NCBI RefSeq assembly: GCF_001194135.2
Contig: NC_068986.1
Coordinates: forward strand, 80,332,054-80,365,608
Source of the DNA: Octopus bimaculoides
Taxonomy: Eukaryota
Length of the DNA stretch: 33,555 nt
Direction of reading: 5' to 3'
Under the pieces are notes generated by a model. The model made no database searches. It was not told the DNA's origin and saw only the letters and a list, made by a program, of their open reading frames with translations. Each line of letters begins with the position of its first letter. Within the stretch, counting starts at the first letter, position 1. Positions 537 to 23,243 of the stretch are shown one piece after another. The translations under genes and the position numbers were made by a program.

Positions 537-707
537 ATTTACAAATGATCCTTTATGCTTCATGATTTGTTGTACACCCAATACTGGCACTGGAATGATG
601 CTAAGTAGAGCAATACCATAACCAACATAGTGAGTCCACTTTGGAAACATAGTACCGTCGCCATAAAATAAATGTTTGAAGGATATTAAACTCGATATCC
701 AGAGACT
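537..707 (-). CDS. SLC6 exon (TM12), 171 nt
   Basis: attacag|AGT CTC TGG ... GTA AAT|gtaagt. Encodes [57 protein letters not shown]. Ends in a donor, so the final exon lies left of the window. Confidence 0.92.
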
Positions 708-21700: not shown

Positions 21701-23243
21701 CTCAAATCTCGCCCTGCCAACTTTACGATGACACTGAATAATATAATAGTTCTAGATATCTGAAAATAGCATAGGATGGTCGTGGATGAAATACATTTGA
21801 TGAGAGATGATAAAGAACATCCGGTGACAACAATAATTCGCACGATCAACTCGACATTTCCGAGTTCCTGTTTTACCGCACGCTCATCAGTTCCCTTGGT
21901 AAAGGACAAAACTTCTTGCGCTTGTAATTACATGGCCACATCAAATCATTATCATTTACTAGAAAATAATTTGGCGGGAAGCCACGATTATAGACACGTT
22001 AATATTGATTGCACAAGGCCAGAAATTTCGGGAGGGAGTAAGTCAATTACATCAACCCCAGTGCTCGACTAGTACTTATTTTATCGACCCCGAAAGGACG
22101 AAAAGTAAAGTCAACCTTGGCAGAATTTGAACTCAGAACGAGAAGGTGGATGAAATGCTGCTAAGTATTTTGCCCGGTGTACTAACGATTCTTTCAGCTC
22201 GTTGCCTTGTAGACATGCTAATATTAATAAAAAGGATATTTTACTTGTTAGCAATTCATAGAACGATAAATAGTAAAGACAATTCTACGGGAACAGTGTG
22301 AGAATATGAAAATAGTGTTTTGCTCCATATAATAATAGTGATAATATTAATAATAATAATACTTTATATTGTAGGCACAAAGCTTAATTTCTTGGGAGAG
22401 GAAGAATTAGTTGATTATATTGACCCTAGTGTGCAACTGGTACTTATTTCATCGATCCCGAAAGGATTAGAAGCAAAGTTGACCTCGACGGAATTTGAAT
22501 TCAGAAAGTAAAGACGGACGAAATGTCGCTAAGCATGTTGTTCGACGTGGTAACGATTCTGCCAGCTCACCAATATTTTCTGTTATTTCCCATTAGGGAG
22601 GCAGTTGAATGTGACAATTACAAAGACGAAGTGTGATTTACATAGAAAGTCTTATCAGGAACCAAAATAACATAAATCATCGGTGCACATAAAACATGGT
22701 TGACATTTTTCAGATAGGTTAGAACGTCAAATTAGATAGGTTTGTGGTATTTACCTGGTTCTCTTTGCCCTAAGCCCAAATACCGTCAATATATTACTAC
22801 GATTCCAGAGTTTACTCTTTAAACTGTTAGCACATTCTGTTATTCTGTTATGCGTTTCAGCCCTAAGGCTGTGGCCATGCTGGGGCACCGCCAAAGGAAA
22901 TTCATTCATGGATCCTCAGTTCCGAACATAAGAAAAATTGTTATCAGAAGAAATAAATTAACTTACTCCCAGTATTCTTCAACAGATGACAACAGTGCCC
23001 GAGAGGAAGATACATTAACATCCTTCGTTGAATTCAGCATCGAGTCTAACGTGGAATTACTTTGAGAAATTTTCGTCAAGGAAATTGATTCATAGCAAAG
23101 ATGTGTGTTCCAGGGGTTGTTACAACTACTCCAAGCTAATTTAGGGTGCATGGAACTATACAGGTAGTATAAGACCCAGGCTATGATCACATTGTAGTAG
23201 ATACTAGTGATGGCACATATAATAATCATTCCAGGACCTAAAC
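537..23243 (-). CDS. Spliced SLC6/NSS sodium-dependent transporter (amino-acid/glycine-proline-transporter-like), partial: TM3-TM12 in 10 exons; 5' exons and terminal exon not located
   Basis: Hand-spliced exons give about 463 stop-free codons with SLC6 motifs: YYNVIIAW, C-x-NPWNTHLC (EL2 disulfide), [13 protein letters not shown]...[34 protein letters not shown]. Exon sizes 135/104/125/113/100/101 match the conserved SLC6 intron pattern as I recall it from vertebrate genes. Orthologue not assignable without a search. Confidence 0.95.
791..903. repeat. (CA)n microsatellite with small gap
   Basis: Seen directly. Confidence 0.95.
1139..1239 (-). CDS. SLC6 exon (TM11), 101 nt
   Basis: tttatag|GA ACC AGA ... 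GTT CTT|gtaagt. Encodes (G)[33 protein letters not shown]. Confidence 0.95.
1400..2760 (-). mobile_element. Degraded pogo/Tigger DNA transposon (transposase pseudogene)
   Basis: Broken frames give [51 protein letters not shown] and a C-terminal [14 protein letters not shown] segment, typical of Tigger transposases. Many stops and frameshifts; boundaries approximate. Confidence 0.8.
2905..3098. repeat. (TATG)n/(TG)n compound microsatellite
   Basis: Seen directly. Confidence 0.9.
3190..3333. repeat. (GAT/GAC)n trinucleotide repeat abutting the 3339 donor
   Basis: Seen directly. Confidence 0.9.
3340..3439 (-). CDS. SLC6 exon (TM10), 100 nt
   Basis: ttctag|AGT GGA CTC TAC ... GTT TAC G|gtaaga. 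Encodes [33 protein letters not shown](G). Confidence 0.95.
3445..4035. repeat. Degenerate minisatellite (core cacatattagcaac) with an embedded (CA)n at 3631-3726
   Basis: Many variants of catattagcaac in series. Confidence 0.8.
4102..5298 (+). mobile_element. Mariner element, transposase pseudogene (DD34D type), right TIR present
   Basis: [14 protein letters not shown] start at 4215, WVPHK, TGD(E)KWV-like, [17 protein letters not shown]; frameshifted. Right TIR (gcattattttttgggatgacccaa) is followed by TA at 5299-5300. Confidence 0.92.
4119..4126 (+). promoter_or_regulatory. TATA-box-like motif upstream of the mariner transposase ATG
   Basis: TATAAAAG about 95 nt before ATG 4215; conserved in the second mariner copy (minus strand, near 18246-18253). 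Confidence 0.35.
5735..5868. repeat. GA-rich polypurine tract
   Basis: (GA)n mixed with ggagtaggagagaga units. Confidence 0.9.
6045..6800. repeat. ~52-bp degenerate satellite, interrupted by the SINE dimer
   Basis: Unit atatttaaggcagtaaacacttcagatttagaactgtgaggtatgttatata; aagg recurs at 6053, 6104, 6156 and 6681, 6733. Confidence 0.85.
6166..6584 (+). mobile_element. Dimer of octopus-type tRNA-derived SINE (family A), flanked by a 17-bp TSD
   Basis: ggcgagctggcagaaacgttagc head, gttcaaattcc B-box-like, gtcgactttgcctttcatcctttcg core, ggggtcgatgtaatcgac. TSD aatatttaaggcaagaa at 6149-6165 and 6585-6601. Confidence 0.85.
7705..7815 (-). CDS. Possible alternative terminal exon of the SLC6 gene
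   Basis: Pyrimidine-rich acceptor (ctttctgttcattgtctttttatggtttcctcag|GAA), phase-compatible with the 8069 donor; reads [36 protein letters not shown]. No transcript evidence. Confidence 0.25.
   Translation of the reverse strand, partial: ERKASGRNTSGHSRVIIGNLSSHRTSDKNVNNSKSR
8069..8200 (-). CDS. SLC6 exon (end of TM8-TM9), 132 nt
   Basis: ctctttcag|TTT GGT CAT ... ACG GAG|gtaaga. Encodes [44 protein letters not shown]. Confidence 0.93.
8422..8612 (-). mobile_element. SINE family B 3' part
   Basis: ttttacttgtttcagtca..gcggtcatgctggagca..tttagtcga; reverse complement of the tail at 12100-12185. Confidence 0.7.
8934..9149. mobile_element. Mariner-type MITE (~216 bp)
   Basis: TIRs tgagggggtgcagaaaagttcttggcttt (8934-8962) and aaagccagaaacttttcggcaccccttcg (9121-9149), the latter followed by TA; no ORF inside. 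Confidence 0.85.
9404..9580 (+). mobile_element. SINE family B 5' part
   Basis: agaagcttgcttccc...ggttcagtccc...cttgggcaa...gtggatttggta...ggaaactgaaagaagcc. Confidence 0.75.
10241..11111 (-). mobile_element. Internally deleted maT (DD37D-type Tc1/mariner) element
   Basis: Frames give [35 protein letters not shown](P)DCNPL[G]YYVWG. Reconstructed spacing from the QQD Asp to the third acidic position is 37 residues. Degenerate TIRs gagggtgcagagactatattgccgcc / cagggtgcgatgagtaaattgtcacc. Confidence 0.85.
11990..12185 (+). mobile_element. SINE family B 3' part
   Basis: ttgacaac...gaccgatagaa...gtcgatttgttcgactaaa...ggcggtgctctagcatggccgcagt...aatgactgaaacaa, (taaaagaa)n tail. Confidence 0.75.
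12499..12600. repeat. (CAA/CAG)n trinucleotide repeat abutting the 12609 donor
   Basis: Seen directly. Confidence 0.9.
12610..12722 (-). CDS. SLC6 exon (EL4-TM8), 113 nt
   Basis: tttccag|GT CCA GGG ATT ... GAC AGT CAA|gtaagt. Encodes [38 protein letters not shown]. Confidence 0.95.
12783..12967 (-). mobile_element. SINE family A copy
   Basis: Reverse complement of family A core (atgaaaggtaaagtcgat, tttgaactcaga, ctgccaactcgcc). Confidence 0.8.
13000..13178 (-). mobile_element. SINE family A copy (internally shortened)
   Basis: ggatgaaaggtaaagtcgacctcggcg ... ctgccagctcgc; tail taggcacaaga. Confidence 0.8.
13216..13288. repeat. 27-bp tandem repeat, ~2.7 copies
   Basis: aattttagatatagcatgtaacattgt repeated directly; ends about 9 nt from the 13297 donor. 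Confidence 0.9.
13298..13422 (-). CDS. SLC6 exon (TM7), 125 nt
   Basis: ttacag|A GAT GCC ATC ... GTT AAA G|gtacat. Encodes [41 protein letters not shown](G). Confidence 0.95.
14401..14504 (-). CDS. SLC6 exon (TM6), 104 nt
   Basis: ttcaag|GTA TGG AAG AAC ... TGT GAG AG|gtaata. Encodes [34 protein letters not shown](R). Confidence 0.95.
15825..16150 (+). mobile_element. SINE family A: 5'-truncated copy followed by a full copy (15938-16150)
   Basis: tactggggtcgatgtaatcgac in the first copy; aaaggcggcgagctgacagg head and gcctttcat core in the second. Confidence 0.75.
16480..16614 (-). CDS. SLC6 exon (TM5), 135 nt
   Basis: cacag|GTT GTA TAC ... GTC ACG|gtaagt. Encodes [45 protein letters not shown]. 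Confidence 0.95.
16795..17111 (+). mobile_element. tRNA-derived CORE-like SINE (family B), runs into gap
   Basis: ggctgtgtggtaagaagc A-box-like, gggttcagttcc B-box-like, accttgggcaagtgtctt CORE-like segment, internal (TG)n, then tgtttgtcccaccaccatcgtttgacaaccg body. Confidence 0.8.
18038..18271 (-). mobile_element. Second mariner copy, 5' part, truncated by N gap
   Basis: [25 protein letters not shown]...; upstream sequence aligns with 4102-4300. Confidence 0.9.
18300..20030 (-). mobile_element. Penelope-like retroelement, degraded RT and linker
   Basis: [77 protein letters not shown]. Frameshifts and stops; boundaries approximate. Confidence 0.9.
20381..20540 (-). mobile_element. SINE family B 5' part (second degenerate head at ~20700-20815)
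   Basis: Reverse complement of the family B head/CORE (ggcttctttcagtt, atccactcacaaggctttgg, gggactaaacccggaacc). Confidence 0.8.
20885..21072 (-). mobile_element. SINE family A copy
   Basis: cctcggcggaatttgaactcagaacg ... attctgccagctcgc. Confidence 0.8.
21453..21585 (-). CDS. SLC6 exon (TM4), 133 nt
   Basis: tgtag|A CGT CAT GTG TTG ... TCT GGT AAG|gtaagt. Encodes [44 protein letters not shown]; phase matches previous exon (GA+A). Confidence 0.95.
22010..22207 (-). mobile_element. SINE family A copy
   Basis: gcacaaggcc tail, tcgaccccgaaagga, gaatttgaactcagaacg, cagctcg head. Confidence 0.8.
22370..22572 (-). mobile_element. SINE family A copy
   Basis: ggcacaa tail, tcgatcccgaaagga, gttgacctcgacggaatttgaa, attctgccagctc head. 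Confidence 0.8.
22967..23243 (-). CDS. SLC6 exon (TM3 + EL2), 277 nt
   Basis: cctgcag|GT TTA GGT CCT GGA ATG ... GAA TAC TGG GA|gtaagt. Encodes [50 protein letters not shown]...SSVEEYW; N-glycosylation sequons NST, NST, NVS. Confidence 0.95.

What the first reader, a model, noticed from the sequence alone, without database searches (positions are those of the whole stretch)
537..23243. Apparently intact but strongly divergent SLC6 transporter with a remodelled binding core - candidate orphan transporter of unknown substrate
Seen: 10 exons splice into about 463 stop-free codons with canonical splice sites, despite introns full of decayed transposons, which argues for purifying selection. Scaffold motifs are intact (TM3 YYN, EL2 Cys pair, GPG, Na2-site GLDS, TM10 gate Asp in VDWY). 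Several normally near-invariant core positions are changed together (detailed in separate findings). Inference: a lineage-specific paralogue with altered substrate and/or ion coupling rather than a standard GlyT/ProT.
Basis: partly seen in the sequence, partly recalled or inferred. Interest (0 to 1): 0.75.

Follow-up and report, generated by a model that had tools for sequence, protein, structure and literature searches.

The report
Octopus-specific duplicate SLC6 transporter gene
This is a real octopus gene for a sodium-coupled amino-acid-type transporter, the faster-evolving copy of a recent tandem duplication, with an altered substrate pocket; it is kept open by selection, is partly hidden by assembly gaps, and is probably misnamed "glycine transporter 2".

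Summary
On the minus strand, 10 exons (23243..537) with AG/GT borders splice into 463 stop-free codons (Pfam SNF, E=3e-145). All five N gaps in the range are intronic. The gene is incomplete in the window. The TM1 and TM2 exons fall in the 100-N gap at 23453-23552, and the last exon lies in the gap beyond position 1. In gap-free O. vulgaris and O. sinensis the ortholog has 13 open exons (587-588 aa).

It is "copy B" of a tandem pair that arose after the Octopus/Argonauta split. It belongs to an uncharacterised mollusc-wide SLC6 subfamily, not to GlyT2.

No frameshift or stop has arisen (8.5 and 3.7 expected if neutral), but constraint is loose (ω≈0.5 in both copies). Copy B fixed three times more replacements than copy A (39 vs 13).

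Its TM6 is unusual: Leu replaces the aromatic lid residue and Ser replaces a near-invariant Gly. That pairing is absent from 262 other SLC6 sequences. Other "odd" residues are inherited from the cephalopod group or the subfamily.

Likely function (inferred): a Na+-coupled amino-acid transporter that is not glycine-specific and depends weakly or not at all on Cl-. Moderate interest.

The parts
22967..23243 (-). Exon 3 (TM3 and most of EL2). Contains the copy-B-specific Thr at 23208-23206 (GlyT2 I283 / LeuT V104), YYN at 23199-23191, and the EL2 Cys pair at 23124-23122 and 23097-23095.
21453..21585 (-). Exon 4 (end of EL2 and TM4), ending ...GIKTSGK.
16480..16614 (-). Exon 5 (TM5).
14401..14504 (-). 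Exon 6 (TM6, unwound core), sequence [12 protein letters not shown]. Leu 14474-14472 corresponds to GlyT2 F476 / LeuT F253. Thr 14456-14454 corresponds to W482 / F259. Ser 14453-14451 corresponds to G483 / G260. Ala 14450-14448 corresponds to G484.
13298..13422 (-). Exon 7 (TM7). Asp 13397-13395 replaces the Na1/Cl- site Asn (GlyT2 N509 / LeuT N286 / GAT1 N327). The Ser equivalent to GAT1 S331 is kept (13385-13383).
12610..12722 (-). Exon 8 (EL4 'GPG' and TM8). The Na2-site motif GLDS is at 12624-12613.
8069..8200 (-). Exon 9 (end of TM8 and TM9). His 8194-8192 (GlyT2 T582 / LeuT I359) and Gln 8188-8186 are subfamily-wide signature residues.
3340..3439 (-). Exon 10 (TM10). Gate Asp at 3412-3410 within VDWY. 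The Ser at 3439-3437, where 102 of 113 homologs have Gly, is specific to O. bimaculoides.
1139..1239 (-). Exon 11 (TM11).
537..707 (-). Exon 12 (TM12). It ends ...KHKGSFVN followed by a GT donor, so the true last exon is not in the window.
23453..23552 (.). 100-N assembly gap standing for about 7.4-9.1 kb that in O. vulgaris and O. sinensis carries exon 1 (TM1) and exon 2 (TM2). The sequence on both sides aligns to the other species right up to the gap edges.
25038..25187 (-). First coding exon of the RefSeq model (MGACPEAI...HLHLRC). It has no SLC6 similarity. It lies in a ~1.9-kb O. bimaculoides-only segment upstream of the gap. It is most likely an annotation artefact that stands in for the hidden exons 1-2.

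Best explanation
The window holds exons 3-12 of a functional SLC6 (neurotransmitter:sodium symporter, LeuT-fold) gene of Octopus bimaculoides. It is 'copy B' of a tandem gene pair that arose in the Octopus lineage after its split from Argonauta. Both copies belong to an uncharacterised SLC6 subfamily found in bivalves, gastropods and cephalopods. This subfamily is separate from the canonical GlyT-like genes, which octopus also has.

Shown: gene structure, family, the duplication, the maintained reading frame, and faster protein change in copy B concentrated partly in the substrate and ion core.

Inferred from residue roles established in GlyT2, GAT1, LeuT and KAAT1:
- The protein works as a Na+-coupled alternating-access symporter. 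The Na2 motif GLDS, the Na1 Asn (TM1) and Ser (TM6), the carboxylate-binding Tyr and the gate Asp are all kept.
- Its substrate is an amino acid or similar carboxylate, because Gly rather than Asp sits at the monoamine position in TM1.
- It is not glycine-specific. The Trp that closes the GlyT pocket is Thr, S479 is Gly, and the aromatic lid residue is Leu.
- It is probably weakly dependent on or independent of Cl-. The Asn shared by the Na1 and Cl- sites is Asp, and orthologs show the Cl- site Tyr changed to Phe.

Copy B is best read as a duplicate under relaxed but real constraint whose pocket has shifted, meaning sub- or neo-functionalisation of substrate range. It is not a pseudogene.
For: Structure and family.

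Orthologs. O. vulgaris has 13 open exons, all AG/GT, 588 aa. The O. sinensis RefSeq model is 587 aa with the same 13 exons.

Hidden exons. The gap at 23453-23552 is syntenic to the segment that carries exons 1-2 in two species.

Duplication. Copies A and B are adjacent on one chromosome in three species. Argonauta has a single gene. dS is 0.36-0.41 between A and B, against about 1.1-1.4 to Argonauta.

Constraint. dS of 0.070 matches intron divergence of 0.068. 8.5 frameshifting indels would be expected and none is seen (P~2e-4). 3.7 stops would be expected and none is seen (P=0.022). The N-versus-S binomial test gives p=0.027. Amino-acid changes are symmetric between species, 14 and 13.

Asymmetry. 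The Tajima relative-rate test gives 49 vs 17 (p=8e-5) and 54 vs 24 (p=7e-4). There are 39 B-fixed against 13 A-fixed derived residues.

Core changes. Five of 22 core positions are derived in B, against 36 of 564 elsewhere (Fisher p=0.014, a post hoc test). Leu at 476 together with Ser at 483 occurs in none of 113 close homologs or 149 diverse representative motifs.

Residue roles from the literature. W482 and S479 limit GlyT2 to glycine (PMC8602798). Asp at the LeuT-N286 position goes with weak or absent Cl- dependence in KAAT1/CAATCH1 and B0AT1/2 (PMC8310414). The GAT1 Cl- site is Y86, Q291, S295, N327, S328 and S331 (PMC10137170).
Against: - There is no expression evidence for copy B. No transcript-derived protein appeared among the database hits.
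- Omega of about 0.5 is high for a transporter, and its bootstrap interval reaches 0.85-1.0.
- Exons 1, 2 and 13 are not in the O. bimaculoides assembly, so this species' copy could in principle be broken there.
- A near-invariant hinge Gly (142 of 149 and 112 of 113) is replaced by Ser, and the aromatic lid by Leu. These changes could impair transport rather than retune it.
- Substrate and ion inferences rest on homology to mutagenesis in distant relatives (about 41% identity). Nothing was measured here.
- The core-enrichment test was defined after seeing the data.
Confidence: 0.65

Rival explanations
1. Neofunctionalised transporter. After duplication, copy B was driven by positive selection to a new substrate class or coupling mode. 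It would be more than a relaxed or shifted version of the ancestral function.
For: Copy B has three times more fixed replacements than copy A. Replacements are enriched at core positions (p=0.014). The L476/T482/S483/A484 set is conserved in all three Octopus orthologs. A scallop paralog (P0050) independently has S-S-A at 482-484. This suggests a recurrent functional state.
Against: The MK-like contrast shows no excess of nonsynonymous fixed differences (N/S 1.09 fixed against 1.8 within clades). The B-stem omega estimate is about 0.45, which is below 1. No branch-site test could be run. The enrichment test is post hoc.
Confidence: 0.2
2. Young pseudogene or dying duplicate. Copy B is no longer functional and simply has not yet picked up disabling mutations.
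For: Omega is 0.48-0.55 with an upper limit near 1. A near-invariant Gly and the aromatic lid residue are replaced. Exons 1, 2 and 13 are absent from the O. bimaculoides assembly. No transcript evidence was found.
Against: There are zero frameshifts against 8.5 expected and zero stops against 3.7 expected. All 20 splice dinucleotides visible in the window are canonical AG/GT, as are those of O. vulgaris (P~0.06 by chance alone). The gene is fully open over 13 exons in O. vulgaris and O. sinensis. Copy A, which has a conventional core, shows the same omega. Replacements between species are mostly conservative and are symmetric. The missing exons coincide exactly with assembly gaps whose flanks align up to the gap edges.
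Confidence: 0.08
3. Orthodox glycine transporter 2 (SLC6A5 ortholog), as the RefSeq product name says.
For: Human GlyT2 is the top solved-structure match (E=1.3e-142, about 41% identity). The automatic names of this protein and many homologs say GlyT2-like or GlyT1-like.
Against: GlyT1, ProT, TauT, BGT1, NET and GAT1 score almost as well (452-447 bits against 480). In the NJ tree, vertebrate GlyT2 groups elsewhere, and octopus has a separate canonical GlyT-like gene, P0048. The glycine-restricting Trp482 is Thr and S479 is Gly. The Cl- site Asn is Asp. Orthologs have only about 10 residues before TM1, where GlyT2 has about 190.
Confidence: 0.03

Closest known systems
Human GlyT2 (SLC6A5; e.g. 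PDB 9hue, 9w8q, 9wbr), the best solved-structure match
   Same: LeuT-fold SLC6 protein aligned over essentially the whole core (E=1.3e-142). These features are conserved: Na2 GLDS-type motif, Na1 Asn213 (seen in orthologs) and Ser477, Tyr286/Tyr287, Gln473, gate Asp633, Glu648, Trp263, Met276, and Gly rather than Asp at the monoamine position.
   Different: Only about 41% identical, and not orthologous in the tree. W482 is Thr, S479 is Gly, F476 is Leu, G483 is Ser, I283 is Thr, T582 is His, N509 is Asp, and Y233 is Phe in orthologs. There is no long N-terminal domain.
Tandem sister gene 'copy A' (O. bimaculoides XP_014772937.2, O. sinensis XP_036359705.1) and the single Argonauta hians gene (P0002)
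   Same: Same 13-exon structure and the same chromosome neighbourhood. They share the subfamily signature Asp509/His582/Gln584/Trp634 and the cephalopod features Phe233, loss of Trp482, and Ser or Ala at 212.
   Different: Copy A keeps an aromatic residue at 476, Gly-Gly at 483-484 and Ile at 283. Copy B has 39 fixed derived residues against 13 in A.
Mollusc-wide uncharacterised SLC6 subfamily (e.g. Pecten maximus P0008, Crassostrea P0037, Haliotis P0013, Lymnaea P0020; auto-named GlyT1/2-like)
   Same: It groups with them in the NJ tree. It shares Asp at the LeuT-N286 position, His582, Gln584 and Trp634.
   Different: Typical members keep Tyr233, Tyr476, Trp482 and Gly483-Gly484 (signature CLGYVYGWGGDSSHQW). 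The cephalopod branch, and copy B most of all, has lost these. No functional study of the subfamily turned up in two literature searches.
KAAT1/CAATCH1 (lepidopteran) and B0AT1/B0AT2 (SLC6A19/15) nutrient amino-acid transporters
   Same: These have Asp instead of Asn at the LeuT-N286 / GAT1-N327 position. The review PMC8310414 links this to altered cation selectivity and to weak or absent Cl- dependence. This is a 'works like' analogy only.
   Different: Sequence relatedness to these proteins was not tested here. They did not appear among the top solved-structure matches. K+ coupling in KAAT1 also involves Lys102, which was not examined here.

Membership tests
SLC6 / neurotransmitter:sodium symporter family (Pfam SNF, PF00209) | Significant match to the family profile over the 12-TM core | tested here: met
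   E=3.3e-145, 485 bits against a cut-off of 27, profile positions 84-522 of 524. The missing positions 1-83 (TM1-2) are present in the O. vulgaris and O. sinensis orthologs.
SLC6 / neurotransmitter:sodium symporter family (Pfam SNF, PF00209) | Na2-site and Na1-site residues and gating residues (LeuT G20/V23/A351/T354/S355; N27/T254/N286; Y108; D404) | tested here: met
   GLDS, Ser477, Tyr287 and Asp633 are present in the window. Gly206, Val209 and Asn213 are present in orthologs. The N286 equivalent is Asp, which also occurs in 34 of 149 diverse SLC6 representatives.
Glycine transporter 2 (SLC6A5) orthologs, the RefSeq product name | Groups with vertebrate GlyT2 in a tree and has it as a clearly best match | tested here: not met
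   In the NJ tree it sits inside a mollusc-only clade, and vertebrate GlyT2 (P0086, P0089, P0090) is elsewhere. Solved-structure scores for GlyT2, GlyT1, ProT, TauT, NET and GAT1 are all within about 7% of each other.
Glycine transporter 2 (SLC6A5) orthologs, the RefSeq product name | Trp482 and Ser479, which restrict the S1 site to glycine (PMC8602798) | tested here: not met
   Thr at 482 (window 14456-14454) and Gly at 479 (14465-14463).
Glycine transporter 2 (SLC6A5) orthologs, the RefSeq product name | Complete Cl- site (GAT1 Y86, Q291, S295, N327, S328, S331 equivalents) | tested here: not met
   Gln, Ser and Ser are kept. Asn is Asp and Ser328 is Gly in the window. Tyr is Phe in the orthologs' exon 2.
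Glycine transporter 2 (SLC6A5) orthologs, the RefSeq product name | Glycine-specific, 3 Na+/1 Cl- coupled uptake | not testable with these tools
   Needs a transport assay.
Mollusc-wide SLC6 subfamily (provisional, defined here) | Clusters with the bivalve, gastropod and cephalopod members and carries Asp509/His582/Gln584/Trp634 (GlyT2 numbering) | tested here: met
   Signature ...DSSHQW in the window protein and in all clade members. The NJ tree is distance-based and has no bootstrap.
Octopus 'copy B' orthogroup | Syntenic position next to copy A, plus shared derived residues (Thr283, Leu476, Thr482, Ser483, Ala484) | tested here: met
   91-92% identity to O. vulgaris and O. sinensis copy B. 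The introns are alignable (6.8% mismatch). The same residues occur in all three species.

The most novel reading that the evidence does not exclude
Copy B has a transport specificity or coupling mode not yet described for SLC6. It combines three features: a non-aromatic (Leu) extracellular lid residue, a Ser in the otherwise Gly-only TM6 hinge, and an Asp at the shared Na1/Cl- position. Together these could support, for example, Cl- independent uptake of a bulkier or polar osmolyte or nutrient specific to octopus physiology. The similar S-S-A motif in a scallop paralog would mark a recurrent, functionally distinct TM6 design.
Probability: 0.15. Interest if true: 0.55.

Novelty: new member of a known kind. 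Interest (0 to 1): 0.3.

Why it matters
It corrects a public gene model. XP_052824442.1 has unrelated first and last coding exons, because the real exons 1, 2 and 13 sit in assembly gaps. Its name, 'glycine transporter 2', conflicts with the residues that define glycine specificity and Cl- binding.

It also points to a mollusc-wide SLC6 subfamily with no characterised member found in the literature searched here. The recent octopus duplicate pair, differing at a handful of pocket positions, is a compact natural experiment. It could show how SLC6 substrate and ion selectivity shift after duplication.

The pair would be useful for transporter structure-function work. It is not a surprise for the field, because lineage-specific SLC6 expansions are common in invertebrates.

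Tried and rejected
- TM1, TM2 and C-terminal exons were searched for in the window and in the 49.5-kb chromosomal locus by tblastn with four relatives (word size 2, E up to 10). None was found.
- Pfam scans of 10 intronic or upstream ORFs, including the ORF that supplies the annotated 5' exon, found nothing at E<=0.01. A second scan at E<=1 gave one solid Mos1 HTH_48 hit and one weak one. The transposon nature of the other ORFs is therefore my reading of motifs, not a tool result.
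- The 1.7-kb segment around the annotated 5' exon has no copy in the other six loci fetched. It could not be shown to be a repeat.
- Rfam found no RNA family in the window.
- The bacterial promoter/terminator scan does not apply to a eukaryote and is ignored.
- Two literature searches on cephalopod and mollusc SLC6 found no study of this gene or subfamily.
- The Edsinger & Dolen SLC6A4 preprint does not cover it.
- A 2026 preprint reports an O. bimaculoides SLC6 gene with dN/dS 3.61 ('SLC6A19', obimac_0001150). No supplement is held, so it cannot be linked to this locus.
- Structure prediction was not run. The window protein lacks TM1-2, and the tool returns no coordinates for measuring the pocket.
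- PAML-type branch-site tests are not available. Nei-Gojobori estimates, a relative-rate test and an MK-like contrast were used instead.

Full report
**What is in the sequence**

The window is 37% G+C, rich in microsatellites, and has nine N runs. It is identical to Octopus bimaculoides chromosome CM046606.1 at about 80.32-80.35 Mb (locus L001 positions 1633-35187, reversed) and is bounded by N runs on both sides.

SLC6-like peptides lie on the minus strand. Ten exons with AG acceptors and GT donors join into 1391 nt, which is 2 nt plus 463 codons with no stop. The exons are 23243-22967, 21585-21453, 16614-16480, 14504-14401, 13422-13298, 12722-12610, 8200-8069, 3439-3340, 1239-1139 and 707-537.

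Pfam SNF (PF00209) matches at E=3.3e-145, covering profile positions 84-522 of 524. The product therefore starts after TM2.

**The assembly gaps**

The five gaps inside the finding are all intronic:
- 848-864 is in intron 11-12.
- 9802-10209 and 11183-11620 are in intron 8-9.
- 17112-18036 and 20105-20338 are in intron 4-5.

Across each of these introns the protein is contiguous with gap-free orthologs, with no residue missing. The gaps do not affect the frame.

The RefSeq model of this gene (XP_052824442.1, P0001, 536 aa, 'glycine transporter 2') uses exactly these ten exons. It begins with 50 residues from window 25187-25038 that have no SLC6 similarity. It ends with 23 residues encoded 4.75 kb downstream, beyond a 2.2-kb N run and outside the window.

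In the gap-free O. vulgaris locus (L002) the orthologous gene has 13 exons, all AG/GT, giving an open 588-aa protein. It has a TM1 exon, a TM2 exon and a C-terminal exon. The O. sinensis RefSeq protein (XP_036359706.1, 587 aa) has the same 13 exons.

Synteny shows where the missing exons belong:
- Window 23914-23553 aligns upstream of exon 1 in both species.
- Window 23452-22843 aligns just upstream of exon 3.
- The 100-N gap at 23453-23552 therefore stands for 7.4-9.1 kb that carries exons 1 and 2.
- Exon 13 would fall about 210 nt beyond window position 1, inside the next N run.

Because alignment runs right up to both gap edges, unassembled sequence is more likely than a deletion. Even so, 'intact' cannot be shown for 3 of the 13 exons in this species.

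**What gene it is**

The closest relatives are:
- O. vulgaris and O. sinensis orthologs, 91-92% identical;
- a second Octopus gene ('copy A'), at an amino-acid distance of about 0.30, whose NCBI model is 76% identical over 76% of the length;
- a single Argonauta hians gene, 68% identical;
- unnamed transcript-assembly proteins that group with the octopods, 50-52% identical and probably from decapodiform cephalopods;
- then bivalve and gastropod proteins, 44-48% identical.

Copies A and B are neighbours on one chromosome in all three Octopus species. Synonymous distance is 0.36-0.41 between A and B, against about 1.1-1.4 to Argonauta. The duplication therefore post-dates the Octopus/Argonauta split.

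In an NJ tree with site signatures, the cephalopod genes sit inside a clade of bivalve and gastropod proteins. That clade shares Asp509, His582, Gln584 and Trp634 (human GlyT2 numbering). Vertebrate GlyT2 and the canonical molluscan GlyT-like genes, including an octopus one (P0048), lie elsewhere.

Human GlyT2 is the top solved-structure match (E=1.3e-142). GlyT1, ProT, TauT, BGT1, NET and GAT1 are within about 7% in score. The product name is not supported as orthology.

**Is it under selection?**

O. bimaculoides against O. vulgaris copy B gives dN=0.040, dS=0.070 and omega=0.56 over 459 codons. Against O. sinensis, omega is 0.48. The bootstrap 95% limits are about 0.3-1.0. A binomial test of nonsynonymous against synonymous counts gives p=0.027.

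The stronger evidence is structural:
- Aligned introns of the same gene differ by 6.8%, matching dS, and carry 6.1 frameshifting indels per kb.
- That predicts 8.5 frameshifts in the 1391 coding bases. None is seen, only one 3-nt indel (P~2e-4).
- Neutral substitution at 6.8% would create 3.7 stops on average (P of none = 0.022).
- All splice dinucleotides are kept.
- Amino-acid changes are split evenly between the two species (14 and 13) and are mostly I/V/L/M-type.

The gene is therefore maintained, but loosely. Copy A shows the same omega between species (0.54-0.61), so loose constraint is not special to copy B.

What is special to copy B is what followed the duplication. Relative-rate tests with Argonauta as outgroup give 49 B-unique against 17 A-unique residues (p=8e-5) and 54 against 24 (p=7e-4). 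There are 39 B-fixed against 13 A-fixed derived residues.

An MK-like contrast gives no sign of gene-wide positive selection. Fixed A/B differences have N/S of 1.09, against about 1.8 within clades.

**The 'remodelled core'**

Against 113 close homologs, only six positions that are at least 90% conserved differ in this protein. Sorting core positions by the branch on which they changed gives three layers.

1. Subfamily-wide changes:
   - N509D (LeuT N286, shared by the Na1 and Cl- sites)
   - T582H (LeuT I359)
   - E584Q

2. Changes shared by all the cephalopod sequences:
   - Y233F (the Cl- site Tyr, in exon 2 and so seen only in orthologs)
   - W482 to I, V or T
   - G212 to A, S or T

3. 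Copy-B-specific changes, shared by all three Octopus orthologs:
   - Y/F476 to Leu (LeuT F253, the aromatic lid)
   - G483 to Ser (LeuT G260)
   - G484 to Ala
   - I283 to Thr (LeuT V104)
   - I482 to Thr
   - in TM1 of the orthologs, L207M and S212T

In a wider sample of 149 TM6 motifs from representatives clustered at 50% identity:
- The lid position is Phe, Tyr or Trp in 131 and Leu in 3.
- The hinge Gly is Gly in 142 and Ser in 3.
- No sequence combines Leu and Ser.
- Asp at the N286 position is common (34 of 149), and Thr at the F259 position is not rare (9 of 149).

One scallop paralog (Argopecten P0050) independently has S-S-A at 482-484. B-derived changes are enriched at 22 predefined substrate and ion positions, 5 of 22 against 36 of 564 (Fisher p=0.014). 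That list was applied after seeing the data.

Much of the rest of the 'remodelling' is inherited.

**How it most likely works (inference)**

The following are kept: the Na2 motif GLDS, Na1 Asn213 and Ser477, Tyr287, Gln473, the gate Asp633, and Gly at the position where monoamine transporters have Asp. This predicts a Na+-coupled, alternating-access carrier of an amino acid or similar carboxylate.

In GlyT2, Trp482 and Ser479 restrict the pocket to glycine. The W482F mutant admits Ala and Leu, and S479G admits sarcosine (PMC8602798). Here these residues are Thr and Gly, and Leu replaces the lid aromatic. Glycine specificity is therefore unlikely, and a larger pocket is expected.

An Asp at the LeuT-N286 position is linked to altered cation selectivity and weak Cl- dependence in KAAT1/CAATCH1. 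It is also usual in the Cl- independent B0AT1/2 (PMC8310414). A fixed negative charge next to Na1 can replace Cl- in GAT1 (PMC10137170).

Three of the six GAT1-type Cl- site residues are changed: Asn to Asp, Ser328 to Gly, and Tyr to Phe in the orthologs. Weak or absent Cl- dependence is therefore the best guess. None of this was measured.

**Verdict**

This is a real, selectively maintained, lineage-specific SLC6 paralogue with a distinctive TM6. It has no characterised ortholog. It is not strongly divergent from its sister copy. Its constraint is loose, and its completeness in O. bimaculoides is hidden by assembly gaps.

It is a new member of a known kind. It is of moderate interest mainly as a correction to an annotation and as a natural A/B pair for SLC6 selectivity studies.

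Noticed in passing
window 1-33555 relative to copy A (CM046606.1 80.396-80.438 Mb, locus L005): In O. vulgaris and O. sinensis, copies A and B lie head-to-tail on the same strand, with A upstream. In the O. bimaculoides assembly they are head-to-head (A on +, B on -). This is either a real inversion or a mis-oriented scaffold piece, since the B locus is bounded by N runs on both sides.
   Followed up: partly
L003 (O. vulgaris copy A) vs L006 (O. sinensis copy A): O. vulgaris and O. sinensis copy B differ by dS 0.011 and 6 residues. Their copy A genes differ by dS 0.068 and 33-34 residues, as much as either differs from O. bimaculoides. The O. vulgaris 'copy A' may not be the strict ortholog. 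Possible causes are a third copy, a divergent haplotype, or introgression.
   Followed up: partly
window 25038-25187 (-), within 24388-26458: The first coding exon of RefSeq XP_052824442.1 lies in a ~1.9-kb segment with no counterpart between the flanking syntenic blocks of O. vulgaris. It overlaps longer ORFs (25241-24999 and 25618-25151) with no Pfam match. It looks like inserted, possibly transposon-derived DNA, but this was not shown.
   Followed up: partly
window ~18040-18157 (-), next to gap 17112-18036; also 4215-5223 (+) and 10367-10902 (-): There is a Mos1-type transposase HTH_48 domain (E=1.1e-11) in intron 4-5. A second, weak HTH_48 match (E=0.07) lies at 4215-4451. Nearby ORFs have mariner-like 'HQDNAQPD...[10 protein letters not shown]' and 'QQDCTMPH' motifs by eye, but Pfam did not score them.
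   Followed up: partly
P0050 (Argopecten irradians), TM6 'QTIYSLGLPSSALIALASHN': A divergent scallop paralog of the same subfamily (52% identical to Pecten P0008) independently replaced Trp-Gly-Gly at GlyT2 482-484 with Ser-Ser-Ala. This resembles octopus copy B's Thr-Ser-Ala.
   Followed up: partly
window 30323-30406 and 30774-30829, flanking gap 30449-30773: The same 24-nt minisatellite (ACCAGCATGATGCGGCGGGGGTAA) sits on both sides of the N run, so that gap probably lies inside one tandem array. Other long simple repeats are (CA)n at 3628-3727, (AC)n at 783-847 abutting the 17-N gap, and (ATAG)n at 33384-33534 at the window end.
   Followed up: no
literature: PMC13174406: [quoted passage not shown] Whether it is this locus, copy A or another SLC6 gene could not be determined, because no supplement is held.
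   Followed up: partly
P0125, P0126, P0148 (representative-library hits, 1227-1699 aa): Several of the best-scoring representatives are 1200-1700-aa proteins with two or three SLC6 stretches. These are probably gene models that fuse tandem SLC6 copies. They are also the only other sequences with Leu at the aromatic lid position.
   Followed up: no
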